This document shows positions 27-61,821 of a DNA stretch of 64,000 nucleotides, piece after piece (the first letter of the stretch is position 1; each line of letters opens with the position of its first letter). A program made the translations under genes and the position numbers. The notes under the pieces were generated by a model that searched no databases, was not told where the DNA came from, and was given only the letters and a program-made list of their open reading frames with translations. The stretch covers positions 190,744 to 254,743 of the IMG/VR virus record IMGVR_UViG_3300007770_001284; one strand, written 5' to 3'.

Positions 27-33
27 ATACTTA
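27..33 (+). promoter_or_regulatory. Putative late-promoter motif ATACTTA
   Basis: ATA(C/T)TTA 9 nt upstream of ATG 43; the same motif recurs upstream of 10 other genes. Confidence 0.55.
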
Positions 34-42
34 TAGTACGCT

Positions 43-798
43 ATGTCGTCGACTTCCCGTCAAATTCAGAGAAGAGTCCGGATGCTGAAGGCAGAATTGC
101 GAATGTTGCAAAATTATTATGATGAGTCTTCTATTGTTTTAGTTGAGTATGAAGAGGAGTGGACTTCTGATCTCACTTATTTTCTTTTAAAGTACAATAA
201 TGAAAAAAAGTCTCTCGCCAGCTCAGATAACCAGTCTTTTGATATTGGACCCGTAAAGGGAGATGGTTGGGAAGAGAGGAATGCTCGTCGAAAACAACGC
301 GATGATCGTATCAAGGCTCGCCGCGGCAAAAAGTGGGGTAGAGAAGCAAAAGAAAAGAATGCTAATACCCCACTTGAAAAAGACACCACGCCAGAATGGG
401 CAAGAAAACTTTTTCGTGAAATTGCGAAATTAACGCATCCTGACAAAGCGCCAGAAGATTCAAAAGAGAAGTTTTCAAAAATATTTCGGCGGGCATCTGC
501 AGCAATTGATGGCGAAGACTATAAAGAGCTACTATCTCTTGCAATGGATTTAGATTTGTCTTTTGACATGTTAGATCAAGAGTTACGTCCCTTATTAGAA
601 CAACGAGTAGTTGATATGAGGGCTAAAATAAAGGCTCTTGAGGAAAAAGCCTCATGGATTTGGGGTGAGAATTTCGGTATGTCTGCCCTCCGTGCAGAAG
701 TCCTACAGCGGATATTGACACAGTCTGGAATAAGCAGATCGTTAGAAGAGCTAAAAGATGAAATTGAGAAAAGAGAAGAGCAAAGTACAAGAGGGTAA
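43..798 (+). CDS. Protein with an internal J-domain-like region
   Basis: LFREIAKLTHPDK (HPD motif) within a helical protein. Confidence 0.6.
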   Translation: MSSTSRQIQRRVRMLKAELRMLQNYYDESSIVLVEYEEEWTSDLTYFLLKYNNEKKSLASSDNQSFDIGPVKGDGWEERNARRKQRDDRIKARRGKKWGREAKEKNANTPLEKDTTPEWARKLFREIAKLTHPDKAPEDSKEKFSKIFRRASAAIDGEDYKELLSLAMDLDLSFDMLDQELRPLLEQRVVDMRAKIKALEEKASWIWGENFGMSALRAEVLQRILTQSGISRSLEELKDEIEKREEQSTRG

Positions 799-970
799 GA
801 TAGCGCATGTGGTCGATACCCACTGCGGTATCGGTGATGACGGTCTATCTTATATTCTTGAACCTGGAATGAGCGGTCTTGTGGTGTCTATCACACCAGA
901 AATTACGACGTTGCTTATTCATGATAGACTTGTAGACGTTAGAGGATATAGCCTGGAAGCTTTATCATGA
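758..970 (+). CDS. Small hypothetical protein
   Basis: 70 aa ORF; ATGA overlap with the next gene; start uncertain. Confidence 0.5.
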   Translation: MKLRKEKSKVQEGKIAHVVDTHCGIGDDGLSYILEPGMSGLVVSITPEITTLLIHDRLVDVRGYSLEALS

Positions 971-1803
971 AACGTATTTCAAGAAAGTATTTAAGCAAAA
1001 TAATAAAAGAAGAGCTACATCTGCATAATCTCTTGGAATCGAATGTGAAGTCTGCTCGTGGGATGTCCAATCGTGTTACAAGAGCGATTATGGACCTTGT
1101 AAAGGATGGTGCCACAAATAGAGAGCGCTATGTTGTATTAACAATAGATGACTTAATCGATGACGAAGGATATCGGTCGCAAGCCACGACTGCGTATAAT
1201 CTGGATATTGACTTTATTCCCGGAAAAATAAACAGGCAGGCCGCTGATGAGGACTTCGAAGAATCAGACGCTTATTTAAGCGTTTCTCTTTTCGTAAACG
1301 AGGGTTCAGAACTGCATGTTTCGGGAGATGATATTAACAGGACGGGTGACCCTGGAATTCATTTAACGATTATAAAGCCTGTAGAGTTAACAGGTGCAGA
1401 TTTATCGACACTTCGAACAGAAATTTCAAATTCTGTTCGTCATGAAATGGAACATATGACACAAAACCTTCCTCGCTATTATCAAGGGATGGAAAAACCT
1501 GACGGTGGTCGGTATGCATATGACGAATTTGATATTTCTGGAGAGCCAGAATCTGATCGCGCGAAAGACTATTATCTCGATCCGAAGGAAGTGTCCGCTC
1601 ATATTATGGGTTATGCACAGAATACATCATCAATAAGCGATTTAGAAGAAGAAATTCGAGAGATGCTTGATAATTGGGCTAGCCCAGACTGGGAGAAGCG
1701 TAAAAATGTTTTAATAGCTCCTGGTGACGTAGACATAATAGCGAATGCTTGGCTAGATTGGGCAAAGAAGCATCTTCGAGGGAAACGATTTCAAGGGAAA
1801 TAA
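967..1803 (+). CDS. Zincin-like metallopeptidase with MKRISRKYLSKIIKEEL...LLES leader
   Basis: RHEMEH (HExxH) plus downstream YYLDPKEV Glu. Confidence 0.6.
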   Translation: MKRISRKYLSKIIKEELHLHNLLESNVKSARGMSNRVTRAIMDLVKDGATNRERYVVLTIDDLIDDEGYRSQATTAYNLDIDFIPGKINRQAADEDFEESDAYLSVSLFVNEGSELHVSGDDINRTGDPGIHLTIIKPVELTGADLSTLRTEISNSVRHEMEHMTQNLPRYYQGMEKPDGGRYAYDEFDISGEPESDRAKDYYLDPKEVSAHIMGYAQNTSSISDLEEEIREMLDNWASPDWEKRKNVLIAPGDVDIIANAWLDWAKKHLRGKRFQGK

Positions 1804-1848
1804 AAGTGAGTGATCATTCTAAAGGACATATACTGAGGTTAGAATATA

Positions 1849-2772
1849 GTGTTTGAAATTTATATTCCATTTTATAACAGCCCGTTTTGTGCTGAGTATC
1901 AAGCGAAAACGCTGCGAGCATTTATGCGTGACGAAGATGTTACACTAATCTTTGTTGATAACAATATGGGGTATCACCCAGAGGCCTCTTTACGAATTAT
2001 TGAGATTTGCAAAGAGTATGATATAGAGCTTATTGTTAACAATGATCCGCTCTGTGCGAAATTTCAAGAGGGAATAGCGCAAGGTCATGTATCTACTTCC
2101 GATAAGCTGGGCCATACGCTTAATTTGATTTATGGCGTAGTCCAGCAAAGAAAACCTGATTATTTTGGGTTTCTCGATCAGGATTGTTTCGCGTTTAAGC
2201 CCGTTCAGCTTAAAGAATATCTAGATGAGCACGGCGCGTACGGAAAGGTGGTCCCAACACATCCGGACGAAAGTCATGTGACACGATCTGGCGAGCATGT
2301 GTGGAATTTACATGTGATGTGTAATTTTTTTAAGCGAGATTTTCTTTCTAACATGAACGTTAATTTTATGCCAGGGAGCTGGTGCGAGAGGCTTGGTTAT
2401 GGCTATGATGTCATACTAGACACGGGAGGAGTTAATTGGTGGACAATGTATAAAGACATGGATCGATCTCAGTATGTGCTACCAGAAGAACATTTTCTGT
2501 ATTATGATGATATTTCTCTCCTTGACCCCAATAATGATAGTCCTACTAAGACTCTTTATGAAGTGCTTGACAACAAGTGGGTGCATATGGTCCACGCCGC
2601 AAATTCTGGTGCAGCAGCAGACTATCTTAAGCCAAAAACTTCATATATGAAGGGATTCCTTGATTTTGCGTTATTGGATGCGGGTGCCGTTGGTGCCAGC
2701 CCTCGTCCAGAGTCTGACTTCATACCGTCGTACAGAGACCCGAACCGTCATTTTTCTTTTGAGGGTTCCTAA
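1849..2772 (+). CDS. GT-A fold glycosyltransferase-like protein
   Basis: N-terminal IYIPFYN, FVDNN and FLDQD (DxD) motifs. Confidence 0.55.
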   Translation: MFEIYIPFYNSPFCAEYQAKTLRAFMRDEDVTLIFVDNNMGYHPEASLRIIEICKEYDIELIVNNDPLCAKFQEGIAQGHVSTSDKLGHTLNLIYGVVQQRKPDYFGFLDQDCFAFKPVQLKEYLDEHGAYGKVVPTHPDESHVTRSGEHVWNLHVMCNFFKRDFLSNMNVNFMPGSWCERLGYGYDVILDTGGVNWWTMYKDMDRSQYVLPEEHFLYYDDISLLDPNNDSPTKTLYEVLDNKWVHMVHAANSGAAADYLKPKTSYMKGFLDFALLDAGAVGASPRPESDFIPSYRDPNRHFSFEGS

Positions 2773-2845: not shown

Positions 2846-5800
2846 GTGCGTAAGACTAAACTGGTTCCCCCAAATAAGTTCATCTCCCTTCATTCTCATG
2901 ATGGGTTTTCTACTTTTGATGGGCTGGGCTATCCACAAGAGCACATCGACTTTGTCATTGAGAACGGCATGGACGGATGGTGTCTCACAAATCATGGTCA
3001 TATGAATTCATTTGGGCATGCTTTTCTTCATGCGGAAAAGGTCCAGAAGCGTGGGGGTACCTTTAGGTTTGTCCCTGGTTGTGAAATGTACGTTCATCCA
3101 GACCTTGACGCTTGGAAGCTGGATTACGAAATTCGCCAGGCTGCAAAGAAGGGTGATAAAGAAGCGTTGTTCTCATTACGAGAACAGCGGGAAGCAATTA
3201 CGACTCCGCTCACCGCCGTCACAGACCGCGACGATGAAATTATTGATATCGGTAAAGAAGAAGCTGGGCTTACCGTAGAAAATGAAGAGGAAACGAAGTC
3301 TGGAAAGTTTTACGATCCAGTGAAGCGTCGCCATCATTTGGTAGTTTTGCCCAAGACCAGCGAGGGTCTCCAACGTTTGTTCCACCTCGTTAGTAGGGGT
3401 TACAGAGAGGGCTTCTATAGGTTCCCGCGTGTTGACTATAGGATGCTAAGGGAAGCTGCTGAGGGAGGCCATCTAATGGTCTCAACAGCATGTATTGGTG
3501 GCCCAATCGCATACGAGGTCTTTAGGCACGCTCAACAGGTCGAGTTTGATGATTTAAAGCATACGCTGCTTGACGATCCGTCATTTCACCGTAACGTTAT
3601 GACGGGAGTTGGAAATGCGTATCAAGGGCTTGTTGATGCTGTCGGAATTGATGATGTACACCTCGAGCTTCAATTTAACAAACTTCCAGCTCAGCATCTA
3701 GTAAATCGGGCGATCATTGAATTTGCAAATAACCAGGGGCTTCAAGACAAGCTGGTTGTTACAACAGATTCTCATTATGCCCGACCAGAGCATTGGCGTG
3801 AACGTGAGCTTTATAAAAAGCTGGGATGGCTAAACTATCGTGAATTCGATCCATCGAAATTGCCCCAATCAAGAGATGATTTGAAGTGCGAGCTTTATCC
3901 TAAGAACGCTCCTCAGGTTTGGGATACGTATCTAGAGTCAACAGACGGAATGGATTTTTACAATGACCAAGTGGTAAAGGACGCAATCGAGCGTCCGCAT
4001 ACGCTTGTTCACGAGGCTATCCAAGACATCGTTCCCGATCGTACCATGAAGCTTCCTTCTTATGTTGTACCTGAAGGTATGACAGATGATAAGGCTTTGC
4101 TTGAGGCATGTAAGAAGGGTCTTGTTGAGCGAGGGTTGGCAAACGATCCAAAATATATCGAGCGAATAAAGCAAGAACTAAAAATCATCAAAGATAAGAA
4201 TTTTTCTCGATATTTCTTAACAATGGAAGCGATTATTAAGATTGCCAAGAAAGCCATGCTTGTCGGACCAGGACGCGGTTCGGCCGCGGGTAGTCTAGTT
4301 GCCTATGTTCTTAAGTTGACAGACGTTGACCCGTTCGAATACGATCTTATGTTTGGTCGTTTTCTAAACCCAAGTCGTGAGGGTGCCCCAGATATCGATA
4401 CCGATGTTGGTGACCGAGATTTGCTTCTCCAGCTAATGAAAGATGAGTGGGGAGATGAGAATATTATCCCCATCTCGAATTATAATACTTTCAAGCTTAA
4501 GTCCCTTGTGAAGGATATCTCTCGTTTTTATGGAATTCCATTTAACGAGGTAAATAAGGCTCTGTCAACTGTAGATGAAGATGTGAAGCGTGCAGTGTTT
4601 AAGCAGGGGACTGATAAAAACCTGTTCGTTCTACTTTACGAAGATGCTCTAGCTCATTCTAAGAAGTTTAGAGCGTTTATCGAGGCGCATCCAGAGGTCG
4701 CCGCCCCTATCCAGGTTTTGTTTAAACAGAACAAGGCTCTTGGTCGTCATGCAGGAGGTTGCATTGTCGCAGAAGATATAGCTGAAAGAATGCCGCTGAT
4801 CAAAGCTCGAGGTGAGCTCCAGACCCCCTGGGCTGAAGGCATGAACTATAAGCATCTTGAAACATTTGGCTGGATTAAGTTCGATCTTCTCGGTCTTGAA
4901 ACGCTACGGATCATTCAAAGAACGATTGAGCTGATTCTTCAAAGAAAAGAGGGTATTGAGGACCCAACATTCGAGCAGGTCTATGAGTGGTTCAATGCAA
5001 ATATGGATCCCAAGGTTCTTGATATGGATGACCAGCATGTCTATGAGCATGTTTATGCAGGTGGTCGTTGGGCCGGTATCTTTCAGCTAGCGGGAAGAGG
5101 TGCGCAAAACCTCTTTAAGAAAGCCAAGCCCAAGAGCATTATCGATATTGCTACGCTGACCTCTATCTATCGTCCAGGCCCACTCACTGCGAAGGTCGAT
5201 AGATTGTATATCAAGGCCAAGAATAATCCTGAGAAGATTGATTATGGGCATCCACTAATCAAAGAAGTACTAGAAGAAACATACGGCTTGATAGTCTTTC
5301 AAGAGCAGATCATGAAGCTTTGTTCTGTTGTAGCTGGTTTCCCAGAGGAAGAAACAGATACTGTTCGTCGCAGTATTATGAAGCGTAAAGCATCAGAGGC
5401 TGCAGAAAGTCTTGCTAAGGCTCGATCTATTAAGGAGCAGTTTGTTGCTGGCTCTGTTAAGAATGGAGTGGATAGTCAGCTTGCAGATGATTTGTACGAA
5501 AAGATTCTCTTCTTCGCAGGATACGGCTTCAATAAGTCTCATGCAGTTTGTTACGCTATTGACTCTTACTACTGCGCTTGGCTTTTAACATATTTCGAAG
5601 AGGAATGGTTATGCGCTTATCTTGAAGCGATGTCGGGTAATGATAAGAAGCGAGCCAAGGCTTTCGCTGAGGTTAAGACGCTAGGGTATCGAGTTGTGCC
5701 CCTTGATATTAATTACGCGACCAAGGATTGGACAATTCTTGAAGGTAAGAAATTTATGCCTTCTCTTTTGTCTTGTAAGGGTATTGGTGAATCTGCAATC

Positions 5801-6460
5801 GACGAACTTGTGACTAGTCGACCGTATAAGCATATTGACGACTTGTTGTGGGATGATATCGGAAAGTGGAGGCATTCCAAATTTAACAAGCGTGCTTTGG
5901 AGGCGTTAATCAATATTCAAGCATTCGAGTCTATGGATCTTATTGGTGACAACAAGACATTTGAAAGCTACAAACAAATGCATGAAGTGTTGATTGGTAA
6001 AAATTCTGAAATCAAGAAATGGACAAAGAAGGATCCAGAACGTGGTCGTAGAAACTTTAACGAGGCGTTGCTTGATACTCAGGGAGCTGGTGTCTGGACA
6101 CGACGAGAGCGAGTTGAGAATAACGTGCGACATTTCGGTTCATTTAATGCAGCTACACTAGTCCCAAGCGAGGTTCAAGAAAAGCTTGCTAAAATGGACA
6201 TTTTTCCCATTGATGAAATTAATGGTCATGACTTGTATTGGTTCCTCGTGTCAGATGTGAAGCCGAAGCTAACAAAGAACAAGCGGCCCTATCTACTGGT
6301 TACAGCAACTGCATTGTCTGGTCAGACCTATCGGATGTTTTGCTGGAGCTGGGATGGTGAAACCGAACTGCCGCTTTACAGTCTGTGCGTAGCTGAAGTG
6401 AAGAAAAATGATTTTGGATATCAAACTTCTATGAGAAAAATCAAAGTTCTTCAGTTATGA
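2846..6460 (+). CDS. dnaE: DNA polymerase III alpha subunit (C family)
   Basis: PHP motifs LHSHDGFS, TNHGH, TDSHY; GRGSAAGS; PDIDTD; KFDLLGL; YGFNKSHA. GTG start chosen from the GGAGG SD. Confidence 0.95.
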   Translation: MRKTKLVPPNKFISLHSHDGFSTFDGLGYPQEHIDFVIENGMDGWCLTNHGHMNSFGHAFLHAEKVQKRGGTFRFVPGCEMYVHPDLDAWKLDYEIRQAAKKGDKEALFSLREQREAITTPLTAVTDRDDEIIDIGKEEAGLTVENEEETKSGKFYDPVKRRHHLVVLPKTSEGLQRLFHLVSRGYREGFYRFPRVDYRMLREAAEGGHLMVSTACIGGPIAYEVFRHAQQVEFDDLKHTLLDDPSFHRNVMTGVGNAYQGLVDAVGIDDVHLELQFNKLPAQHLVNRAIIEFANNQGLQDKLVVTTDSHYARPEHWRERELYKKLGWLNYREFDPSKLPQSRDDLKCELYPKNAPQVWDTYLESTDGMDFYNDQVVKDAIERPHTLVHEAIQDIVPDRTMKLPSYVVPEGMTDDKALLEACKKGLVERGLANDPKYIERIKQELKIIKDKNFSRYFLTMEAIIKIAKKAMLVGPGRGSAAGSLVAYVLKLTDVDPFEYDLMFGRFLNPSREGAPDIDTDVGDRDLLLQLMKDEWGDENIIPISNYNTFKLKSLVKDISRFYGIPFNEVNKALSTVDEDVKRAVFKQGTDKNLFVLLYEDALAHSKKFRAFIEAHPEVAAPIQVLFKQNKALGRHAGGCIVAEDIAERMPLIKARGELQTPWAEGMNYKHLETFGWIKFDLLGLETLRIIQRTIELILQRKEGIEDPTFEQVYEWFNANMDPKVLDMDDQHVYEHVYAGGRWAGIFQLAGRGAQNLFKKAKPKSIIDIATLTSIYRPGPLTAKVDRLYIKAKNNPEKIDYGHPLIKEVLEETYGLIVFQEQIMKLCSVVAGFPEEETDTVRRSIMKRKASEAAESLAKARSIKEQFVAGSVKNGVDSQLADDLYEKILFFAGYGFNKSHAVCYAIDSYYCAWLLTYFEEEWLCAYLEAMSGNDKKRAKAFAEVKTLGYRVVPLDINYATKDWTILEGKKFMPSLLSCKGIGESAIDELVTSRPYKHIDDLLWDDIGKWRHSKFNKRALEALINIQAFESMDLIGDNKTFESYKQMHEVLIGKNSEIKKWTKKDPERGRRNFNEALLDTQGAGVWTRRERVENNVRHFGSFNAATLVPSEVQEKLAKMDIFPIDEINGHDLYWFLVSDVKPKLTKNKRPYLLVTATALSGQTYRMFCWSWDGETELPLYSLCVAEVKKNDFGYQTSMRKIKVLQL

Positions 6461-13565: not shown

Positions 13566-13572
13566 ATATTTA
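13566..13572 (+). promoter_or_regulatory. Putative late-promoter motif ATATTTA
   Basis: Intergenic, at the start of the acidic-protein block. Confidence 0.55.
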
Positions 13573-17959: not shown

Positions 17960-17966
17960 ATATTTA
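17960..17966 (+). promoter_or_regulatory. Putative late-promoter motif ATATTTA
   Basis: Intergenic, upstream of 17992. Confidence 0.55.
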
Positions 17967-19671: not shown

Positions 19672-19678
19672 ATACTTA
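19672..19678 (+). promoter_or_regulatory. Putative late-promoter motif ATACTTA
   Basis: Upstream of GGTGAGG SD and ATG 19694. Confidence 0.55.
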
Positions 19679-23810: not shown

Positions 23811-24043
23811 TGACACATAGCGAGATCCTTGAAGAAGCCATTGGTCTCGGGAGCGTTTGCGAGATAAACGAGTGGATGGAATTGAAAAAACTTTTACTAG
23901 TCAGTCTTCCCTCTGATGCTAGGAGAAATTTCTCCACTAGAGACCCAAAAACAAAAAGACAGCACCTAAATGATTTTGAGCATTGGTTGATTGATAATTA
24001 CTTCCGTGCACTTGGCACAAAGCTTGGAGTTGAAGATGAATAG
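23810..24043 (+). CDS. Hypothetical protein
   Basis: Coupled small ORF. Confidence 0.5.
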   Translation: MTHSEILEEAIGLGSVCEINEWMELKKLLLVSLPSDARRNFSTRDPKTKRQHLNDFEHWLIDNYFRALGTKLGVEDE

Positions 24044-29416: not shown

Positions 29417-29667
29417 TGGCTCAAAGAAGACAAACACGTCAGCCCTTTAGGAAAGTAGATATGCAAAATATCCAATATATGTCCGACTCTAAAGTCGAAA
29501 TGTTACTGGAGCGATACAGACAAAAGAGGCGGTATAGTCCTCCTGAATTTTATAAGAGCTATGAAGAAGAAATATGTTATTTATTTCGAGAAGCGGAGTG
29601 TCGAAAAAATAGGAAAATTGCTCATCAAAATTATTTGAGAAAAAAGACAAGATATCGTGCAAAGTAA
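29413..29667 (+). CDS. Basic hypothetical protein
   Basis: Coupled ORF. Confidence 0.5.
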   Translation: MMAQRRQTRQPFRKVDMQNIQYMSDSKVEMLLERYRQKRRYSPPEFYKSYEEEICYLFREAECRKNRKIAHQNYLRKKTRYRAK

Positions 29668-29686
29668 CGTACATATGGTGTATAAT
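29657..29686 (+). promoter_or_regulatory. Sigma70-like promoter GTGCAA-N18-TATAAT
   Basis: Upstream of the sigma-factor gene. Confidence 0.5.
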
Positions 29687-29752
29687 ATTAATGATGGATG
29701 GGGAAATACCTCTATCTGTGACTAACCTAATTTACTCGGGGCTATAAAACAT

Positions 29753-30508
29753 ATGATGCTAGACCATTACTTTAAGGATGTGGGAAGCCATGATCTTCTC
29801 ACGAGAGAAGAAGAAGTAGAGCTTGCAAAAGCAATTGAACTGGGTGACCAGTCTGCTAGAGAAAAGATGATTCAGTCGAATCTTCGTCTTGCGATCTCTA
29901 TTGCAAAGAAATTCCGTGACCGCGGATGTTCGTTTGAAGACTTGATTCAAGAATCGAATATTGGCTTGATTAGAGCGGTCGATCGTTTTGACTGGCGTAG
30001 GGGTTTCAAGTTCAGTACATATGCTGTGTGGTGGATTCGTCAAGCCGTGCAATCTCACGTTGCTGGCCAGTCTGGCGCAATTAAGATGCCAACTTCTGCT
30101 CGAGCGCTAATGTACAGAGCGTACAAATTCACGGAAGAATATACCGAAGAGTTTAAATGCGAGCCCTCTCCTGAAGAAGTCGCCGCGGCAGTTGGTGTTC
30201 CGGTTCAGACTCTAAAGGCAATCAGAAAGTCAGGAGCACCTCAACTATCACTGGACGCCCCGGTAGGGAAAAACGATTCGGGGAGTCGAACATTCGCTGA
30301 GCTTGTTGGAGGCACGGACGATCGTGATCCGGGCGATAGTCTGGATCGTATTGTTCTTCGGGGTGCTCTAGTTGGCGCTCTTAAGAAGCTATCTTCTCGA
30401 GAAGAAAAGATTATTCGTCTTCGATTTGGGTTGTCTGAAGATGACCATGATTCTGAGAATTTTCCAATTTCAAAAGCTGATTTTTTGAAGCTACAAGGGA
30501 GTAAGTAA
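29753..30508 (+). CDS. RpoD/RpoS-like sigma70 factor lacking region 4.2
   Basis: [56 protein letters not shown], then stop 24 aa later. Confidence 0.9.
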
Positions 30509-30786
30509 TGAGTATGCCAAAGGGATTCAAAGCCACACACGGCTACGCAACAGTAACTGAGCGGGGTGGCAAGGGCTATCGTGAAATTGCTGAAATTATG
30601 ACAGAGCATGGCGATTCCATGAAGCACTCTGCTGCTAGAAACTATTTCTTAAGCGGAATGCGAAAGGTTGCGTCTGTCGTATGCGAGCTTTACGAAATGC
30701 CAAATGACGAGATTGAGCGGATCGCTCTTGATCCAAGGTTCCAGGAAAGCGTAGCAGACATTATGTCAGAGGGAATTGATTTGTGA
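30508..30786 (+). CDS. Small HTH-like protein, possible detached sigma region 4.2
   Basis: GYREIAEIM...SAARNYFLSGMRKV; TAATG coupling with its own AGGGAG SD. Confidence 0.5.
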   Translation: MSMPKGFKATHGYATVTERGGKGYREIAEIMTEHGDSMKHSAARNYFLSGMRKVASVVCELYEMPNDEIERIALDPRFQESVADIMSEGIDL

Positions 30787-34347: not shown

Positions 34348-34354
34348 ATATTTA
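34348..34354 (+). promoter_or_regulatory. Putative late-promoter motif ATATTTA
   Basis: 5 nt upstream of ATG 34360. Confidence 0.5.
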
Positions 34355-34960: not shown

Positions 34961-34981
34961 AATAATGTAAAAGGAGCTGGG

Positions 34982-35167: not shown

Positions 35168-35168
35168 A

Positions 35169-36050: not shown

Positions 36051-36080
36051 TGCTATTCCATCGCACACATACGCTTTTCA

Positions 36081-36087
36081 TAAATAT
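36081..36087 (-). promoter_or_regulatory. Putative late-promoter motif ATATTTA
   Basis: TAAATAT on the + strand, upstream of the kinase gene. Confidence 0.55.
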
Positions 36088-36116
36088 GCGGTCCGGCCAG
36101 ATAAAAATGCTTAAGC

Positions 36117-37349: not shown

Positions 37350-37387
37350 ACCTCGTTCCTAAAATTATAATCGTATCCATGATGATA

Positions 37388-37394
37388 TAAATAT
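37388..37394 (-). promoter_or_regulatory. Putative late-promoter motif ATATTTA
   Basis: Upstream of the tubulin gene. Confidence 0.5.
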
Positions 37395-37421
37395 GTTGTT
37401 TTAGTACAATTGTACAAAGAA

Positions 37422-37766
37422 TGGTGGAGGCGGCGGGAGTCGAACCCGCGTCCAAAGCAGTTTAGGGATCAAGTCATTCACAGGTTTAGACAGTTTTTCT
37501 AAACTGACAAATCTTCCGCTGGTGAAACCCCCCTGCTCGCGGATACAAGGTTCGAGCATTATTTTATTTCAGTGATGCTACTTCACTTAGCCTAAATTGG
37601 ATAGATGGTTTTAGGCAACCACCCGATTACGCAGCTAGGGCGTATTCGAAGTGATTGTTGTTATTGGCAACTATCTTTTTTGAAACCGCGATTTAGGTCT
37701 GCTGTTTCCTGAGACCACCTGCACTCTTATACTCCTTTGCTACCCTGTCGAAGCCATATCGCCCCC
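37422..37766 (-). ncRNA. ssrA: tmRNA; tag (A)ANNNNHFEYALAA encoded at 37627..37668
   Basis: 5' GGGGGCG...TTCGACAGG; 3' GGGTTCGACTCCCGCCGCCTCCACCA; G3-U70 pair; tag ends ALAA-stop. Confidence 0.95.
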
Positions 37767-37796
37767 AGGATGAAAATTTTAACTATGTCTTTTATT

Positions 37797-37803
37797 ATAT
37801 TTA
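37797..37803 (+). promoter_or_regulatory. Putative late-promoter motif ATATTTA at the head of the effector array
   Basis: Upstream of GAGGG SD and ATG 37820. Confidence 0.55.
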
Positions 37804-37819
37804 AGATTGAGGGAATTTC

Positions 37820-38575
37820 ATGCCTATACGAAAAATAGTTGCATTTGATTTTGATGACACGCTGGCGGTTACTGAATCGCGAATCGGTGTTCAGCGCCCA
37901 GAGGCAGCTGGAACGTCCTCTCCCACGTTAGAAGACTGGTTGCTAGACCACAATATTCAATATATGGATGTAACGGGTACGGGTGGTAATGAGTTTTATT
38001 GGTTAGATTCTGCAAATTTTGCATTGTATGAAGAGCATGCTGAAGGATTTGAGGATGTGATTGATTACGTTGGGACATCTTCATTTGATGTGAGCAAAGC
38101 TCAAGTGATTACCCCAATGTTAAAAAAGCTGGTTGAAGCAGAATCAGATCCTGATACGCTAGCATTAATCATAACGGCGAGAGCAGGGAAGAAGCAGATG
38201 TACAGTCCGTCTCAGGGAACGTCAGTAAAGCCCTTAAACCGCTCCCAGATCCTTCAGTTCTTAAAAGATAATGGAATCAGCTTTGATGACAGCAGATTAC
38301 ATACAGTGGGTGACCAGGGCTCTAATAGCGCTGCACACAAGGTCAACGTATTGACTGGATATCTAAACAAGTATAAACCAGATGAGTTAATTTTTTATGA
38401 TGATAACGAAAATAATGTAAGGGCAGTTGCTGCATTGTGTAAGCAATTTGCTCCGTCAGTGAAGATATCAGCTTTCCGCGTGGCAGCGGGGTGGATTTCT
38501 TCGGAATCTGGGTGCAATGAAACGGTTAATTTACGCTTGAAAAAGATACTTAGTCGTACAGGCCGCGCTCGTTAG
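37820..38575 (+). CDS. HAD-superfamily phosphatase
   Basis: FDFDDTL, ITAR, K, FYDDNENN. Confidence 0.8.
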   Translation: MPIRKIVAFDFDDTLAVTESRIGVQRPEAAGTSSPTLEDWLLDHNIQYMDVTGTGGNEFYWLDSANFALYEEHAEGFEDVIDYVGTSSFDVSKAQVITPMLKKLVEAESDPDTLALIITARAGKKQMYSPSQGTSVKPLNRSQILQFLKDNGISFDDSRLHTVGDQGSNSAAHKVNVLTGYLNKYKPDELIFYDDNENNVRAVAALCKQFAPSVKISAFRVAAGWISSESGCNETVNLRLKKILSRTGRAR

Positions 38576-47730: not shown

Positions 47731-48401
47731 GCTTACTTCGCGAATACATCAGTGAGGTGCTGCAAGTGACTGCTCGAGTGCAACCCGAGTCCCAGATATT
47801 CTGTGACATGGACGGCGTTTTGGTAAATTTTGAAGATATGATTGTGAGATTTATCAACGGTCTTTTGGGCGGTGGCATCTCTCCAGGGATTGAAATTACG
47901 AAGGGTTACGAGAAGAGGCTAGCAAAAGTACGCGGAGAGCTCGGTCCAGATTGGCGCGCAAAGGGTCGTCCTGATTTAGATATTAAGTCGGTTCGAAATT
48001 TTATGATGGGTGCTGTTGGAGCAAATCCTGGTCCTATATTTGCTGAGATGAAGCCACATGCTGACGCTCTGGAAAAACTTTGGCCATTTCTGACGGGGAC
48101 TGGTCGGACTGTGAATATACTGACTGCTGAAATTAGGGCGAGAGAGGGAGCTGTTATGACAACGGCCGAAGGGAAGGAATTGTGGATACACAGGTGGCTT
48201 AAGCCTCAACCTTCTCAAATTATTATGTCACCAGCCAAACAGAAAGCCAGGTATGCAACGACCAACGGCATTCCCAACATACTTATTGATGATAAACTTA
48301 CGACCGTCGACAGCTGGAATGCCGCCGGCGGAATTGGTATCTGGCATCTGCCGGGCGGAAGCGTAGACACTGTGGAACAGCTAAAGGAATTGGGCGTATG
48401 A
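47727..48401 (+). CDS. Leader-bearing HAD 5'(3')-nucleotidase-like protein
   Basis: GTG-SLLREYISEVL; FCDMDGVL, ILT, K, LIDDK. Confidence 0.8.
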   Translation: MSLLREYISEVLQVTARVQPESQIFCDMDGVLVNFEDMIVRFINGLLGGGISPGIEITKGYEKRLAKVRGELGPDWRAKGRPDLDIKSVRNFMMGAVGANPGPIFAEMKPHADALEKLWPFLTGTGRTVNILTAEIRAREGAVMTTAEGKELWIHRWLKPQPSQIIMSPAKQKARYATTNGIPNILIDDKLTTVDSWNAAGGIGIWHLPGGSVDTVEQLKELGV

Positions 48402-50521
48402 AAACTCAGTTGCACATATACGATTTTGATGCAACTCTTTTCATGAGCCCGATGCATCCCGACGATTGGGAAGGTCACATCGGTCATTGGTACGATACGC
48501 TACAATCGTTGTCACCGCCCTGTGTAATCGATCCTCCCAATGATTTGTGGATAGGCAGCACAGTGTCTAGTGCACATAGCAGTATAGCCGACCCCAATGT
48601 ATATGCGATTTTAATGACAGGTCGCACAAGAAAACCTGAATTAGTTGGTCGGATAGCAGAGCTTCTTGCTATGGGAGGGCTAACGTTTGAAGAGATCTTG
48701 CTTAAGCCCACTGGAGATGTTAGGACTCTGCCGTGGAAATCTTCAATGATTGAAAAGCTAGCTGAAAAATTGCCTGACTTACAAGAAGTACATATCTGGG
48801 AAGATAGAGCAGACCATCTACAGGCTTTTGTTAAGCTTGTAGAATCTATGGGACTCACAGCGGTACCGCACTTTGTTAATGTTGTGCTCAATGCGCCCTG
48901 CGATTTAGGGAGTGTACAGCCCGACGTCGACCCTGGCGCTGTGATGGATCTCCCAGTGTTGAGTAAGCAGAATGAAAATTTAGTAAGACGATACATCAAG
49001 CTTTGTTTGGAAAAAACCGTCCGAAGCCAGAAAGACAAACGTGTCCTGTATCACATTAATCGCTTTCGTCCCGCTCGTCCCCAGCCGAAAATGTCGTATT
49101 TTCAAGAGTGGGACCCGGATGCAATTGACCCGGACACGCATGAAAGAACAGGCGACTATGTAGACGTTCCAGGAACCGACAACTGGCAACGACACTGGCT
49201 TGATAGTCCAGTTAAGTCCGGCGTTTTCTTAACCCCCAACCCAATTGATATAGCGATCAATCACGGTAGATCTGGTCACGTATACGCCTATAAAGTACCA
49301 CAGTGGGTTATAGCTAAATCAGGTGGTTTACATCGATATGATCATGGTTCCGAAGTACTAGTTCCTGAAGATGTCTGGAACGAGGCGGGTAAAGAGATCG
49401 AGTTCATGGGTAAGAGTATGGACAAGGAAGAGTTGTGGGATGAGATGATGCCTTCCCTGTATGGACGTGGCCACCACCGGCCAGCAACAAAACCATCCTG
49501 GATGTCCGGTGAAGAATTAAAGCAATGGAAAAAGGGTCAAAGTAAATTTAATCTCTCTGGCTTAAGAGCAACACGACATCCCGAAGATGTAATCAAAATG
49601 CTTACGTCAGATGAACAGCGAAAGGCGATTGAAGCGATTGAAGCGAAGAAAGAGGATATTCCTGGCTTTATTGAAAAAGGCCCAAGAGACAAAAAGGGAA
49701 TTGTGGTTCCGCCATTTGGACAACTATTAGACAAGAAAGACGAAGAGCTCTTGGCTTTGCTGAACAAACACCTGAACGAAGATATATTACGTGGGTACGT
49801 GAGGGCTCTATTGATCGAAAAATCATTAACTGGCCGGAAGCTTGAGAAGGTCGCAACATTGATAGCTGATGAAGTTATCGAATATCTTTTAGATGAAGAC
49901 CTCAGGGGTGCGTTTGCGGCACAGGGTCCGCTTGGGTTTCAAGTAGAAGTTGAGTTACCAGAAGCAGTGTTGTGGCTGCGAAATGTGTATGTGAAAATGG
50001 AGCCAGCAGATATTTTTAACAGCGATGCAAGCTATGAATTTGATCTAGATGCGACTGATGAGCAGCGAGAAGAATCAGATATTCGAATTAATCTTCAAAT
50101 GCCAACAGACTACTCAGACGAAGAAGTAGAAAAGCTTAAAGTAGAAATTGAAGCTGATATTCGCCACGAGCTAGAACATTCAGGACAGTCCACAGATGTC
50201 CTAATGGATGTACAGAGGAACGTCCCGGATTCTGAGATATGGAAATCCTTAGATCGTGCTGATTATTACTACACAAGTGAGGCTGAGGTGCCCTCATACG
50301 TGTCCAGCCTTGTTCTTAAATCTAAGAGGCATGAGTCGCATGCAGCGGATGAAATTGATGAAGACCTCAATAAGATCTACGCTACAGGACTAAGCAAGGG
50401 CTACTCTGAAGAAGAGTTGTCCCCCCTGATGACAAAGATTAGAGACACTTGGCAGTATTATTTAATGTCTCGGTGGCCTGAGCAAGAATGGCCGATTGAA
50501 TTTAGGCCAGAAAATGGGTAA
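48398..50521 (+). CDS. Multidomain protein: HAD phosphatase, ART-like domain and zincin metallopeptidase
   Basis: YDFDATL/WEDR; LYH/VFLT; RHELEH; linkers NENLVRRYIKLCLE and NEDILRGYVRALLIE. Confidence 0.72.
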   Translation: MKTQLHIYDFDATLFMSPMHPDDWEGHIGHWYDTLQSLSPPCVIDPPNDLWIGSTVSSAHSSIADPNVYAILMTGRTRKPELVGRIAELLAMGGLTFEEILLKPTGDVRTLPWKSSMIEKLAEKLPDLQEVHIWEDRADHLQAFVKLVESMGLTAVPHFVNVVLNAPCDLGSVQPDVDPGAVMDLPVLSKQNENLVRRYIKLCLEKTVRSQKDKRVLYHINRFRPARPQPKMSYFQEWDPDAIDPDTHERTGDYVDVPGTDNWQRHWLDSPVKSGVFLTPNPIDIAINHGRSGHVYAYKVPQWVIAKSGGLHRYDHGSEVLVPEDVWNEAGKEIEFMGKSMDKEELWDEMMPSLYGRGHHRPATKPSWMSGEELKQWKKGQSKFNLSGLRATRHPEDVIKMLTSDEQRKAIEAIEAKKEDIPGFIEKGPRDKKGIVVPPFGQLLDKKDEELLALLNKHLNEDILRGYVRALLIEKSLTGRKLEKVATLIADEVIEYLLDEDLRGAFAAQGPLGFQVEVELPEAVLWLRNVYVKMEPADIFNSDASYEFDLDATDEQREESDIRINLQMPTDYSDEEVEKLKVEIEADIRHELEHSGQSTDVLMDVQRNVPDSEIWKSLDRADYYYTSEAEVPSYVSSLVLKSKRHESHAADEIDEDLNKIYATGLSKGYSEEELSPLMTKIRDTWQYYLMSRWPEQEWPIEFRPENG

Positions 50522-52052: not shown

Positions 52053-52116
52053 AATTGCCCTGTTAATAACTATAGATTTGGGGGGTATATTTACAGTTGG
52101 TTGAAAGGGTAGTATT

Positions 52117-52527
52117 ATGACAACTTCTGGTAAGAGCTGTGGCCCAATTTTTATTGAAAATTCTAGGGTGCCAGTGTGTCTTTCTGCTTTTTCTCCAATC
52201 GATATTCACGCTATCAACTTAGTTTTTTTTGTATTTTGTAGAACCGAGATGAGCGACCAAACAAAGCAACACGAAACGATCCATTTCAAGCAGTGGCTAG
52301 AATTATTGATCGTTGGATTCGGTGTTCTTTACGTCGCTTTCTATCTTTGGTTTCGTCTGGTTAAACGATTAGATGGACCCGCTGCATATCGCGCTATTCC
52401 GTTCGAACGCGAAGCGTATGCACATCAAGGGACTGTCTCGTATCTTTCTGAAAGAAAAATGTACGCATGGACGAAATATATTCGTTCGAATTTACCAGGA
52501 GATACCGGAGATGCTCAAGAAACATGA
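52117..52527 (+). CDS. Hypothetical protein with HExxH-like motif and TM
   Basis: QHETIH, PFEREAY; start uncertain. Confidence 0.55.
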   Translation: MTTSGKSCGPIFIENSRVPVCLSAFSPIDIHAINLVFFVFCRTEMSDQTKQHETIHFKQWLELLIVGFGVLYVAFYLWFRLVKRLDGPAAYRAIPFEREAYAHQGTVSYLSERKMYAWTKYIRSNLPGDTGDAQET

Positions 52528-54767: not shown

Positions 54768-54809
54768 CTACTAATTTTTTGTAGCATAATTATGACTAGA
54801 ACACAAAGA

Positions 54810-54882
54810 TGGGGTGTAGCATAATTGGCAGTGCACCGGGTTGTTACCCCGGAGGTTGGTGGTTCGAATCCACCCGCCCCAG
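54810..54882 (+). tRNA. tRNA-Asn(GTT), no encoded CCA
   Basis: CCGGG-TTGTTAC-CCCGG; U1-A72; discriminator G followed by CCT. Confidence 0.88.
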
Positions 54883-54891
54883 CCTTGGTAC

Positions 54892-59844: not shown

Positions 59845-60152
59845 GATTATCACCCAGGTCAATGGTTCCAGAGCACTTCAGCCTATTTTTGCTTTTGAAC
59901 CTTGTGGATTATTGTACCACTGCGTGTATTATTCTTGAGGGCGGAGTGGAGGTTATGCCAGTTGCTCGAGGCCTTATTGAGCTCTATGGTATCGCTGGAT
60001 TGTTTTTTCATAAATTGTTTGTTGCAATCGGTGTCAGTTATCTGTGTCGTAATATGTCAGATAAAGCGTGGAACATCTTAAATTGGTTGTTCACAATAAT
60101 TGTGGCGTGGAATTCCCTGCAGCTTACTATGGTATTATTCGGTAAGGTGTAA
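59838..60152 (+). CDS. Membrane protein
   Basis: LNLVDYCTT...GGVEVMP; three TMs. Confidence 0.6.
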   Translation: MVRLSPRSMVPEHFSLFLLLNLVDYCTTACIILEGGVEVMPVARGLIELYGIAGLFFHKLFVAIGVSYLCRNMSDKAWNILNWLFTIIVAWNSLQLTMVLFGKV

Positions 60153-60506
60153 TGGACGATGAGCAAGTGGAATTAGGTGACATCGAAAAGCTTGGCAAAC
60201 TTTATCGTTAATTAGAATTTCGTAGACATCATAAATCGCACCTTCTGGCCCGCTACAGATTTGTAAGGGCCGGCCCATCTTCTCTACTATAATTGCGATA
60301 TCACCTTCTTGGACTTGGACGGTGCTACCAAAAAAATCATTCCATCCAGGCCATGAGCTCAGCCTAATCTTTTCGTAAAAGATATCGTAATTTTCTCGTT
60401 TACCCGCTGTTGCAAACCCTACGTTAGAAAGCAATTCTTTGTTGAACGTAATGGAAACAAGCTGACCGCTCACTAGTGGTGTGTACGTTGTGGGCCCCTG
60501 TTCCAT
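60135..60506 (-). CDS. Hypothetical protein
   Basis: 123 aa ORF with upstream late motif. Confidence 0.55.
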   Translation of the reverse strand: MEQGPTTYTPLVSGQLVSITFNKELLSNVGFATAGKRENYDIFYEKIRLSSWPGWNDFFGSTVQVQEGDIAIIVEKMGRPLQICSGPEGAIYDVYEILINDKVCQAFRCHLIPLAHRPLHLTE

Positions 60507-60513
60507 CTACGTA

Positions 60514-60520
60514 TAAATAT
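60514..60520 (-). promoter_or_regulatory. Putative late-promoter motif ATATTTA
   Basis: 7 nt upstream of ATG 60506. Confidence 0.5.
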
Positions 60521-60591
60521 GATATTTTGCTAAACTATCTCATCCCTGAATTGACTGCACCCCAACTATGTCTGTTCGCTGCTGGCTTATT

Positions 60592-61755
60592 TTAGGGATT
60601 GCGAATCTCGCCGACGATCCACCATACTGAACCATCACACTGAACAGATAACACATCATATTTTTTGACAAGTTCGAGTTCAGCATCCACCTGCCCATCA
60701 ATCTCTTCACCGGATGCTGCATGTACGAAACAGTCACATGAATCTCTACCAATTTTCTTGAATGTATATATTCTTCCCTGGATACCAGATGATACAGAGG
60801 GAAGCGTGCAGGTAGTGTCAACATCACCATTACCCATTAAGACAGTGTGATGAGTATGATCAATCGTTACGTTCCCAGTCACCGAATCAATACGAGTACT
60901 TCTTGAGCCGTTAACGTCAAGCGTAGAATTGGGGGTCGTGGTTCCGACGCCCACTGCTCCATTACTGTCTATTGTAAGCCTCGAGTTTGTATCAGGAGTC
61001 GCTGTACCGAACTTAAGTTTGTCGGCATCGCTGTCATCTACTCCTATCGACCACGGTATGGAAGAACCGCCATCAACGCTAAACGAGAGAATCGCGTCTG
61101 AATCCCCGACATCAGCTGATTGAATCACTATCGAAGAATTTGAGTCTGATATAAATTTAGTATGTCCGTTGGCATTTGATGGCTTGATCCAGAGGTCACC
61201 CGCCGGTGTCGCTTTGAAGTCCACGTACTTTGAACCATCAGTATGCGTAAGCCTAAGTTGTGGGTTTGACGCGTCTAGCACATCTAACTTTCTATCAGGA
61301 CCAGTGGTTCCCACGCCAAAGTTTCCCTCACTTTCATCAAAATAGAAGCCTGTGGTGGTGTTAGTTCCATAGATGTGAAAATCTCGTGTCACGGTGTCGA
61401 GTTTATTTAGTCCAGCATGGGCCATTAAGGTCATATAGGCATCACTGTTCGTGGTAGTACCCATCATTAATTTAAGACCTCCTGCCACTTCTAGATCTAT
61501 CCGATAGTTACTAGTTGTATCATCAAGGCGTATGACAGAGTCTGCGCCCTCTATGTGTAGAACCGTATCAGGCGTAGAAATCCCGATACCTACTCTCCCA
61601 GCTTCTGTGATGATTGCTCGCTCTACACCAGCAGTATCAAAACGAATCTTGTCTTCATCTGCAGATTCTTCTACCTGAACTAGAGTATCGCCATCCGCAT
61701 CTTCTAGTCTGTCTTCATTTACCTGCCCGGCACTCATCACAGATTTTCTAGCCAT
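60592..61755 (-). CDS. Tail-fibre-like structural protein
   Basis: Three GxxG(I/V)G(T/I)xxP...L(H/D)(I/V) repeats. Confidence 0.65.
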   Translation of the reverse strand: MARKSVMSAGQVNEDRLEDADGDTLVQVEESADEDKIRFDTAGVERAIITEAGRVGIGISTPDTVLHIEGADSVIRLDDTTSNYRIDLEVAGGLKLMMGTTTNSDAYMTLMAHAGLNKLDTVTRDFHIYGTNTTTGFYFDESEGNFGVGTTGPDRKLDVLDASNPQLRLTHTDGSKYVDFKATPAGDLWIKPSNANGHTKFISDSNSSIVIQSADVGDSDAILSFSVDGGSSIPWSIGVDDSDADKLKFGTATPDTNSRLTIDSNGAVGVGTTTPNSTLDVNGSRSTRIDSVTGNVTIDHTHHTVLMGNGDVDTTCTLPSVSSGIQGRIYTFKKIGRDSCDCFVHAASGEEIDGQVDAELELVKKYDVLSVQCDGSVWWIVGEIRNP

Positions 61756-61799
61756 TTCTTTCTCCCGTACGTGTGTATATGCGCTCTTTGGAGCATATA

Positions 61800-61821
61800 A
61801 TACTTATCAAACCATAAATAT
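61800..61821. promoter_or_regulatory. Pair of late motifs: ATACTTA (+, 61800-61806) and ATATTTA (-, 61815-61821)
   Basis: In the 90-bp gap between divergent genes. Confidence 0.55.

What the first reader, a model, noticed from the sequence alone, without database searches (positions are those of the whole stretch)
27..61821. A second promoter class, ATA(C/T)TTA, marks the virion/leader-motif genes
Seen: an exact ATA(C/T)TTA lies 5-45 nt upstream of 11 genes on both strands (27, 13566, 17960, 19672, 34348, 36081-, 37388-, 37797, 60514-, 61800, 61815-). These head the acidic block, the effector array, the tail fibre and the ligase fusion, and none has a -35/-10 pair. Known: T4 late promoters are a single short -10 box (TATAAATA) read by gp55. 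Inference: this is a distinct late promoter, close to the reverse complement of the T4 one, and a possible target of the truncated sigma.
Basis: partly seen in the sequence, partly recalled or inferred. Interest (0 to 1): 0.6.

Follow-up and report, generated by a model that had tools for sequence, protein, structure and literature searches.

The report
Phage late promoter box ATANTTA
A seven-base signal, ATANTTA, sits just upstream of about 40 genes of this uncultured marine jumbo phage and its relatives; it behaves like a T4-style late promoter with no -35 element, so it is a new sequence variant of a known kind of phage switch.

Summary
All 11 sites exist at the stated coordinates. The word is not enriched by raw count (21 in the window against 19 expected), but it is strongly non-random by position.

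- **Motif:** the true motif is ATANTTA, with position 4 free. ATATTTA is the top-ranked 7-mer in upstream noncoding DNA.
- **Position and orientation:** 36 of 39 intergenic copies point at the adjacent gene. Inside genes the motif is the most avoided word of its composition on both strands.
- **Replication:** the signal recurs in four diverged relatives and is absent from two outgroup jumbo phages. It is kept at orthologous genes while the flanks diverge.
- **Genes headed:** terminase-portal, capsid, adaptor, sheath, tube and baseplate genes, plus a tmRNA, a tRNA and metabolic genes.
- **Start site:** a recurrent ATANTTA-N5-ATG spacing without a Shine-Dalgarno implies leaderless mRNAs and a start 6 nt downstream. 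That puts the box at -12..-6, the register of T4's TATAAATA.

The promoter reading is well supported. The "virion-only" reading and the link to the truncated sigma are only partly supported. That sigma lacks only the region 4.2 recognition helix and is predicted to dock with the next ORF. The phage also encodes a gp55-like sigma, which I judge the likelier reader. No transcript 5' ends were available.

The parts
27..33 (+). ATACTTA, class II box upstream of gene 82-798 (or ATG 43)
   Evidence: orthologs in G001 and G003 keep an ATANTTA upstream
13566..13572 (+). ATATTTA upstream of the 448-aa gene 13604-14950
   Evidence: kept in G001 and G003 while the flanks diverge
17960..17966 (+). ATATTTA upstream of the 394-aa gene 17992-19176
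   Evidence: kept in G001
19672..19678 (+). ATACTTA upstream of the 411-aa gene 19694-20929
   Evidence: G001 ATACTTA, G003 ATATTTA
34348..34354 (+). ATATTTA followed after 5 nt by the in-frame ATG at 34360 of the HD-hydrolase gene; probably a leaderless start
36081..36087 (-). ATATTTA upstream of the ATPase/PNK-like gene 35169-36050
37388..37394 (-). ATATTTA upstream of the tubulin/TubZ-like gene 36117-37349
   Evidence: (kept in G001 and G003)
37780..37786 (-).
37797..37803 (+). ATATTTA upstream of the PNK-like gene 37820-38575; forms a back-to-back divergent pair with 37780(-)
52067..52073 (-).
52087..52093 (+). ATATTTA upstream of gene 52117-52527; divergent pair with 52067(-)
54786..54792 (+). 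ATAATTA 17 nt upstream of tRNA-Asn (54810-54884)
60514..60520 (-). ATATTTA 7 nt upstream of the start of gene 60135-60506
61800..61806 (+). ATACTTA (within TATAATACTTA) upstream of the 636-aa NMNAT-like fusion gene 61846-63756
   Evidence: TATAATACTTA kept in G003
61815..61821 (-). ATATTTA upstream of the tail-fibre-like gene 60592-61755; divergent pair with 61800(+)
23994..24000 (+). ATAATTA inside the 3' end of the upstream gene, 35 nt before start 24036 (candidate embedded promoter; others at 31014, 38546, 54286)
   Evidence: sense-strand CDS copies cluster within 80 nt of the next start (G000 8 of 34 against 2.2 expected; G003 13 of 32 against 2.5)
29753..30508 (+). RpoD-like sigma with regions 1.2, 2, 3 and 4.1 but no region 4.2 recognition helix (candidate reader A)
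30508..30786 (+). 92-aa ORF, start overlapping the sigma stop codon; found next to the truncated sigma in all 17 family loci (abutting or overlapping in 16, about 700 nt downstream in L033) and predicted to dock on sigma region 4.1
   Evidence: score 0.64 against best control 0.00
29655..29686 (+). Class I promoter (TCGTGCAA-N18-TATAAT) heading the sigma gene; a second copy at 34930-34961
37422..37766 (-). Phage tmRNA gene, a non-coding target of the motif

Best explanation
ATANTTA is the core element of the phage-specific promoter class of this T4-superfamily marine jumbo-phage family. It has no -35 element and lies at about -12 to -6, with transcription starting about 6 nt after its last A. 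Some of the resulting mRNAs are leaderless; the rest have leaders of 9 nt or more carrying a Shine-Dalgarno. The phage has no RNA polymerase of its own, so host core RNAP must be redirected by a phage sigma. The likeliest reader is the gp55-like 241-aa sigma (genome 89581-90306, outside the window), which combines a sigma-2 domain, a sigma-4/gp33-like C-terminal domain and a hydrophobic-acidic C-terminal tail. Earlier genes, including the RpoD-like sigma gene in the window, use a separate sigma70-like class (TCGTGCAA-N18-TATAAT).

Shown: the enrichment, orientation, avoidance inside genes, conservation and gene content. Inferred: the start site, from spacing.

That the motif is a promoter core of this kind I put at about 0.85.
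For: - **Motif definition and rank:**
- **Orientation:** 129 of 139 intergenic copies point at a gene in five family genomes, 2.3-3.3 times the shuffle expectation.
- **Avoidance inside genes:** obs/exp 0.52 on the sense strand and 0.22 on the antisense strand, the two most depleted of 20 composition-matched words. Antisense avoidance argues for a DNA-level directional signal, not an mRNA signal.
- **Replication:** seen in G003, G001, G004 and G008 (GC 43-54%) and absent from outgroups G009 and G006.
- **Ortholog conservation:** 20/20 against 0/24 in G001; 16/21 against 5/38 in G003 (p 2e-6); position 4 varies between orthologous sites.
- **RNA genes:** it heads a tmRNA and a tRNA.
- **Divergent gene pairs:** each carries one box per strand.
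- **Virion operons:**
- **Start site:** ATG at offset 5 in 14 of 105 sites against 1 of 130 coding copies. The MAGIL gene keeps ATACTTA-N5-ATG in three genomes with different spacers and no SD. T is favoured at position 12 and purine at position 13.
- **Register:** it matches the T4 TATAAATA box (-13..-6) and Aeh1 CTAAATA (from -12).
- **gp55-like sigma:** phrog_234 E 1.6e-7 and 2.5e-6 for the G003 ortholog and 1e-4 for G000. Nearly all of the top 50 structural hits are sigma factors. The C-terminal tail resembles the T4 gp33 and gp55 clamp epitopes in 22 of 22 homologs.
- **Capsid type:** gp23-type major capsid protein.
- **No phage RNAP:** no beta-like subunit found, with a working control; the T7-type RNAP search was uninformative because its control was silent.
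Against: - No transcript 5' ends are available. The only runs holding the locus are contigs of related strains.
- The gp55 assignment is borderline by sequence: 18 bits for G000, not significant by hhalign against T4 gp55, and no PDB sequence hit.
- No gp33 homolog and no phage clamp was found (uninformative).
- The box differs from T4's at -8 and is free at -9.
- It also heads apparently non-late genes: the DnaE operon, tRNA, tmRNA and a tubulin-like gene.
Confidence: 0.5

Rival explanations
1. It is the same promoter class, but read by the RpoD-like sigma in the window (29753-30508), working as a two-piece sigma with the 92-aa ORF at 30508-30786. nATAnT would serve as a sigma70-type -10 hexamer (A-11, T-7), followed by a 7-nt discriminator beginning TA. 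The missing 4.2 recognition helix would explain the lack of a -35 element.
For: - Region 2.3/2.4 is close to SigA ([11 protein letters not shown]) and regions 1.2 to 4.1 are intact.
- The truncation and the adjacent ORF are conserved in all 17 family loci. More distant phage sigmas have a complete region 4.2 and no such ORF.
- Complex model: 0.64 against best control 0.00 (the mark is reached by 58 of 80 solved complexes and 2 of 110 mismatched pairs). The runs agree in at least 55% of contacts, partner pLDDT is at least 67, and the interface lies on region 4.1.
- The sigma gene has its own class I promoter in both G000 and G003.
- The motif is present in all five genomes carrying this sigma, including the partial G004 and G008, and absent from two outgroups with complete sigmas.
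- It would account for the box heading non-late genes.
Against: - A sigma-2 domain this close to SigA would be expected to prefer TATAAT, which is the -10 of class I.
- The start site would lie 8 nt from the hexamer rather than 7.
- The ORF has no detectable sigma-4 similarity by hhalign or by fold.
- The T4-type register and the gp55-like sigma offer a closer precedent.
Confidence: 0.3
2. ATANTTA is simply a weak -10-like element used by the host's own primary sigma, with no phage factor needed.
For: nATAnT keeps the two key -10 bases, A-11 and T-7 (from the sequence plus established sigma70 knowledge). Two window sites also have TATAAT-like hexamers nearby.
Against: - There is no -35 element and no TG extension in 105 sites. 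Such promoters are very weak for sigma70 holoenzyme, yet they head the most abundant virion genes.
- The T and A after the hexamer are invariant, which sigma70 does not require.
- The phage's own sigma70-like class looks quite different.
- The motif is family-specific across GC contents of 43-54%.
Confidence: 0.07
3. It is not a promoter but another cis signal, such as an RNA-processing or translation signal in the 5' UTR, or the binding site of a DNA-binding regulator.
For: Only its position upstream of genes. No transcript data exclude it.
Against: - The strongest avoidance is on the antisense strand of genes, which is barely transcribed in a genome that is about 95% one strand.
- The distance to the start codon varies from 5 to about 70 nt, but there is a sharp class at exactly 5 nt with no SD.
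- It precedes a tmRNA and a tRNA.
- It is non-palindromic, 7 bp long and strictly oriented.
Confidence: 0.05
4. It is a chance product of AT-rich intergenic composition.
For: The total count equals the shuffle expectation.
Against: It is the top-ranked 7-mer under a Markov model of the intergenic DNA itself. Within-segment shuffles, 93% orientation bias, single-base specificity, ortholog conservation and five-genome replication with two negative outgroups all argue against chance.
Confidence: 0.01

Closest known systems
T4-type late promoters (TATAAATA at -13..-6, read by gp55 with gp33 and the gp45 clamp); the lineage variant CTAAATA of phage Aeh1
   Same: A short A/T box with no -35 element, in the same inferred register (a 7-mer from -12 to -6). 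Five of the six fixed bases are shared with ATAAATA. It sits directly upstream of head, tail and baseplate genes. The phage is of the gp23-capsid superfamily and encodes a gp55-like sigma with a hydrophobic-acidic C-terminal tail.
   Different: T instead of A at -8 and a free base at -9. No gp33 or gp45 homolog was detected. The candidate sigma is 241 aa and carries a sigma-4-like domain, so it resembles gp55 and gp33 in one chain. The box also heads tRNA, tmRNA and metabolic genes, and some of the mRNAs appear to be leaderless.
sigma70-type -10 / extended -10 promoters
   Same: nATAnT preserves A-11 and T-7. The start-site context has a pyrimidine at -1 and a purine at +1.
   Different: No -35 element and no TG extension. 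-12 is not conserved. There are two extra invariant bases (TA) after the hexamer. The genome's real sigma70-like class is TCGTGCAA-N18-TATAAT.
Phage sigma cascades (SPO1 gp28 then gp33/34; phiEco32 gp36) and the RpoD-like plus minimal-HTH sigmas of RNAP-less jumbo phages (Iyer et al. 2021, PMC7824862)
   Same: The phage has no RNAP but has phage sigmas. A sigma70-like early class precedes a phage-specific class, and the early class drives a sigma gene.
   Different: Those phage sigmas read bipartite -35/-10 promoters. Here the class has a single box, and one sigma is naturally split after region 4.1.

Membership tests
T4-type late promoter | Short A/T-rich box at about -13/-12 to -6 relative to the start site | tested here: inconclusive
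   The register was inferred, not mapped. ATANTTA-N5-ATG occurs in 14 of 105 sites against 1 of 130 controls and is conserved in an ortholog trio; T at position 12 and purine at position 13. This matches -12..-6. No 5'-end data.
T4-type late promoter | No -35 element or other upstream sequence requirement | tested here: met
   No information content from -45 to -1 in 105 pooled sites.
T4-type late promoter | Lies upstream of virion (late) genes | tested here: met
   Terminase-portal, major head, adaptor, sheath x2, tube, TMP-like and baseplate wedge genes. It also heads non-virion genes.
T4-type late promoter | Consensus TATAAATA | tested here: not met
   The consensus is ATANTTA; the T4 word ATAAATA is not the enriched form. 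Lineage variants are known, for example Aeh1 CTAAATA.
T4-type late promoter | Phage encodes a gp55 late sigma | tested here: inconclusive
   phrog_234 E 1e-4 for G000, and 1.6e-7 and 2.5e-6 for the G003 ortholog. Structural hits are dominated by sigma factors. hhalign against T4 gp55 is not significant.
T4-type late promoter | gp33 co-activator and gp45 sliding clamp | tested here: not met
   No phrog_254 match in G000, G001 or G003. No beta-clamp with a working control. The gp45 family search was uninformative because its control was silent. The candidate sigma's C-terminal domain and tail might substitute.
sigma70-type promoter | -10 hexamer with A-11 and T-7, plus a -35 hexamer or a TG extension | tested here: not met
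   The hexamer nATAnT is compatible, but there is no -35 element and no TG.
Group 1/2 sigma70 factor (for the window's sigma gene) | Regions 1.2, 2, 3, 4.1 and 4.2 | tested here: not met
   Regions 1.2, 2, 3 and 4.1 are present. The 4.2 recognition helix is absent in all 17 family members.

The most novel reading that the evidence does not exclude
The ATANTTA class is read by a naturally split primary-like sigma. ORF 29753-30508 supplies regions 1.2 to 4.1. The translationally coupled 92-aa ORF, which has no recognisable fold relatives, docks on region 4.1 in place of the -35-reading helix. The result would be a -35-independent holoenzyme that takes over most phage transcription, with leaderless mRNAs as part of the programme. 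This would be a new architecture for a sigma70-family factor, widespread in abundant marine jumbo phages.
Probability: 0.3. Interest if true: 0.7.

Novelty: new variant of a known kind. Interest (0 to 1): 0.55.

Why it matters
It gives a tested, portable rule for finding transcription units in a large, abundant and uncultured family of marine jumbo phages: ATANTTA, gene-directed, with the start about 6 nt downstream. The candidate sigma alone has about 2,700 homologs in ocean metagenomes. The finding extends the T4 late-promoter paradigm to a far branch with a different box. It also predicts leaderless phage mRNAs and exposes two unusual sigma architectures that can be tested in vitro without culturing the host: a split RpoD-like sigma and a gp55-plus-sigma-4-like sigma.

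Tried and rejected
- **Raw-count enrichment:** none. Position, not number, carries the signal.
- **RNA evidence:** the only runs holding the locus are seawater runs labelled metatranscriptomic and stored as contigs of 90-99% similar strains. They give no 5' ends, strand or level. The matches at 37422-37456 are the conserved 3' ends of other organisms' tmRNAs.
- **The 92-aa ORF as a detached region 4.2:** hhalign against complete sigma tails gives probability 0.8%. Pfam finds nothing. Foldseek finds nothing below E 2.8. VIA-align gives a best Z of 5.0. tblastn against annotated phages finds nothing. Only the complex model supports a link to sigma.
- **Profiles of the gp55-like family against PDB sequences:** no sigma hit.
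- **gp33, beta-clamp and gp45 searches:** negative or uninformative.
- **T7-type RNAP search:** uninformative, because its control was silent.
- **Separating the two sigmas by presence or absence:** they co-occur in all fairly complete genomes, and the other contigs are only 36-42% complete.
- **A third promoter motif among the remaining intergenic regions:** only SD words and TATAAT(A) stand out.
- **Close relatives among annotated phages:** none at the DNA level.
- **Literature:** no paper describing an ATATTTA or ATANTTA phage promoter was found.

Full report
**Context.** The window is the last 64 kb of a single 254,743-bp virus contig. The contig has 44% GC, about 95% of its genes lie on one strand, and about 5% of it is noncoding. 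It is an uncultured marine jumbo phage. Identical or related contigs occur in IMG/VR and in ocean assemblies. No close relative exists among annotated phages. Its major head protein is of the gp23 (T4-superfamily) type.

**The observation.** The word is not over-represented by count: 21 against 19.3 +/- 4.4 in dinucleotide shuffles. Its placement is far from random.
- Genome-wide, 24 of 65 copies fall in noncoding DNA.
- In an unbiased scan of upstream noncoding DNA against an order-2 Markov model of that same DNA, ATATTTA is the top 7-mer (16-17 regions against 3.2 expected, p 3e-7 to 6e-8), ahead of the Shine-Dalgarno words. ATAGTTA also ranks high.
- A single-base scan shows that position 4 is free. 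The noncoding shares are ATATTTA 18/45, ATAGTTA 8/14, ATAATTA 5/12 and ATACTTA 5/20. Changing any other position drops the share to 1-17%, against 7% for AT-rich 7-mers in general.
- The real motif is therefore ATANTTA: 91 copies in the genome, 36-38 of them noncoding.

**Evidence that it is functional and directional.**
- *Orientation.* 36 of 39 intergenic copies in this genome point at the adjacent gene start. Across five family genomes the figure is 129 of 139, with 2.3-3.3 times more copies than within-segment shuffles give.
- *Avoidance.* Under synonymous-codon shuffling, ATANTTA inside genes is at 0.52 of expectation on the sense strand (z about -4). Its complement is at 0.22 (z about -8). 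These are the two most depleted of all 20 composition-matched words. Because the antisense strand is hardly transcribed, this points to a DNA-level directional signal whose stray copies are harmful, as expected for a promoter.
- *Embedded copies.* The sense copies that do occur inside genes cluster in the last 80 nt before the next start codon: 8 of 34 against 2.2 expected, and 13 of 32 against 2.5 in G003.
- *Divergent genes.* Each divergent gene pair in the window carries two boxes, one per strand (37780-/37797+, 52067-/52087+, 61800+/61815-).
- *RNA genes.* The motif also precedes RNA genes: the tmRNA by 13 nt and tRNA-Asn by 17 nt.

**Replication and footprinting.** I fetched whole related contigs.

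| Genome | Sigma identity to G000 | Result |
|---|---|---|
| G003 (281 kb) | 72% | ATATTTA in 22 upstream regions against 3.2 expected (p 4e-12) |
| G001 | 86% | ATATTTA and ATAGTTA are the top two 7-mers |
| G004 | 52% | ATACTTA is the top 7-mer |
| G008 (GC 54%) | 55% | ATAGTTA is the top 7-mer; 8 of only 13 copies are intergenic |
| G009, G006 (outgroups, complete sigmas) | 39%, 32% | no enrichment and random orientation |

At the ortholog level, genes with the box in G000 have it in G001 in 20 of 20 cases, against 0 of 24 for genes without it. In G003 (median protein identity 55%) the figures are 16 of 21 against 5 of 38 (p 2e-6). The aligned upstream regions show diverged flanks around six invariant bases, with position 4 changing between orthologs. 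The tail tube, for example, has ATATTTA, ATAGTTA and ATACTTA.

**Anatomy and start site.** Pooling 105 gene-directed sites from four diverged genomes shows no -35 element, no TG extension and no other upstream information. C is disfavoured right after the box. T is favoured at position 12 and purines at 13-16. The spacing to the start codon is bimodal: exactly 5 nt in ten sites, none from 8 to 13, then 14 or more. An ATG lies at offset 5 in 14 of 105 sites, against 1 of 130 coding copies. One gene (MAGIL...) keeps ATACTTA-N5-ATG in three genomes with unrelated spacers and no Shine-Dalgarno. The simplest reading is that transcription starts at position 13, which is 6 nt after the box. That gives leaderless mRNAs for this subset and leaders of 9 nt or more for the rest. 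In the window, site 34348 is probably of the leaderless type, using the in-frame ATG at 34360. This start site is an inference; no transcript 5' ends could be obtained.

**What the box heads.** Outside the window it heads:
- the gene in front of the terminase-portal pair;
- the gene in front of the major head protein;
- an adaptor-like gene;
- both tail-sheath paralogues;
- the tail tube;
- a TMP-like giant gene;
- a gp25-like baseplate wedge gene.

It also heads Nudix, NifU, HD-hydrolase and PNK-like genes, a tubulin/TubZ-like gene (an Atlas lead), an NMNAT-like fusion, and the block that contains DnaE. So it drives the virion modules but is not restricted to them. Only one window target (60592-61755) has tail-fibre-like neighbours.

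**The other promoter class.** A separate, elaborate class reads TCGTGCAA-N18-TATAAT, usually as TGGTATAAT, followed by a conserved leader (ATAAATGAAGGTGGGG...). It clusters near the genome ends and sits in front of the sigma gene in both G000 (window 29655) and G003. It looks like the host-sigma70 early class.

**Who reads ATANTTA.** The genome has no beta-like RNAP subunit (control working). A search for a T7-type RNAP found nothing, but its control was silent. Host core polymerase is therefore most likely used. There are two phage candidates.

*(A) The window's RpoD-like sigma.*
- It has regions 1.2, 2, 3 and 4.1 but stops where the 4.2 recognition helix should begin.
- This truncation, and an 88-99-aa ORF just downstream (abutting or overlapping in 16 loci, about 700 nt away in L033), are conserved in all 17 family loci. 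More distant phage sigmas have a complete 4.2 and no such ORF.
- The ORF has no detectable sigma-4 similarity or known fold.
- A complex model supports binding to sigma region 4.1. The score is 0.64 against a best control of 0.00. That mark is reached by 58 of 80 solved complexes and 2 of 110 mismatched pairs. The runs agree in at least 55% of contacts and the partner pLDDT is at least 67.

*(B) A 241-aa protein at genome 89581-90306.*
- It matches the PHROG family of T4 gp55 late sigmas weakly but repeatedly.
- It folds with pLDDT 78 into a model whose nearest structures are almost all sigma factors.
- It ends in a hydrophobic-acidic tail like the clamp-binding tails of T4 gp33 and gp55 in 22 of 22 homologs.
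- No gp33 or clamp homolog was found.

With the inferred start site, ATANTTA occupies -12..-6. The T4 late box TATAAATA occupies -13..-6, its -13 base is poorly conserved, and Aeh1, which has a diverged gp55, uses CTAAATA from -12. In the same orientation the boxes differ at one fixed base (ATAAATA in T4, ATANTTA here). For this reason I rank candidate (B) first (about 0.5) and candidate (A) second (about 0.3). The two co-occur in every fairly complete genome, so comparative presence or absence could not separate them.

**Verdict.** The motif needs widening to ATANTTA. It is a promoter-like, -35-less box of the T4-late kind in a new sequence variant. The virion-only reading and the link to the truncated sigma are only partly supported.

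Noticed in passing
window 29655-29710 and 34930-34985; genome 8604, 10066, 13321; about 20 copies in G003: Class I promoters, TCGTGCAA-N18-TATAAT (mostly TGGTATAAT), are followed by a conserved transcribed leader (ATAAATGAAGGTGGGG...) that can pair with a downstream C-run. The role of the leader (structure, small RNA or regulator site) is unknown. One copy heads the sigma gene in both G000 and G003.
   Followed up: partly
window 29753-30786: The sigma70-family gene is split or remodelled after region 4.1. The translationally coupled 92-aa ORF (a beta-hairpin plus four helices, no known fold match) is predicted to dock on region 4.1 (0.64 against best control 0.00).
   Followed up: yes
genome 89581-90306 (L006:14581-15303): A 241-aa gp55-like sigma with a sigma-4-like C-terminal domain and a clamp-epitope-like C-terminal tail. 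It has about 2,700 unnamed homologs in marine metagenomes and no Pfam assignment.
   Followed up: yes
genome 43513-43839, minus strand (L003:13513-13839): A free-standing 108-aa protein that is a bona fide Sigma70 region 4 HTH (34.6 bits) with changed recognition residues (TRMRICQIE). It is conserved in G003 (57% identity). It could be a decoy, an appropriator or a trans sigma-4.
   Followed up: partly
window 37422-37766 (-), 53598, 54692, 54810, 58590, 63890: A phage-encoded tmRNA (tag ANNNNHFEYALAA) and five tRNAs (Met, Lys, Asn, Arg, Leu).
   Followed up: partly
window 36117-37349 (-): The 410-aa protein's nearest Atlas clusters are phage tubulin/TubZ/PhuZ-like (score 0.96). This is a lead only, but it would be notable for a phage of the gp23-capsid type.
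   Followed up: no
genome 121863, 177640, 185020; window 34348 and 60514; G003 10282, 15125, 83684, 157083, 188247, 272419: A set of genes has the start codon 5-7 nt after the box and no Shine-Dalgarno, which implies leaderless mRNAs. Most begin Met-Ala.
   Followed up: yes
window 2846-6460, 27833-29416, 40553-42190, 48398-50521, 34423-38575: The window also encodes a DnaE-type Pol III alpha, a GroEL-like chaperonin, a CCA-adding/poly(A) polymerase-like enzyme, and a cluster of RNA-repair-like genes (HAD 'Swiss army knife' domain, PNK-like, HD hydrolase) around the tmRNA.
   Followed up: no
genome 155117-161377: Two tandem tail-sheath paralogues of more than 1,000 aa each. Each has its own ATAGTTA box, and the arrangement is conserved in G001 and G003.
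   Followed up: partly
window 61790-61806 and the G003 ortholog (222802): The NMNAT-like fusion gene has overlapping TATAAT and ATACTTA boxes (TATAATACTTA) in both genomes. In G003 a class I TCGTGCAA element lies upstream, which suggests a promoter used in two modes.
   Followed up: no
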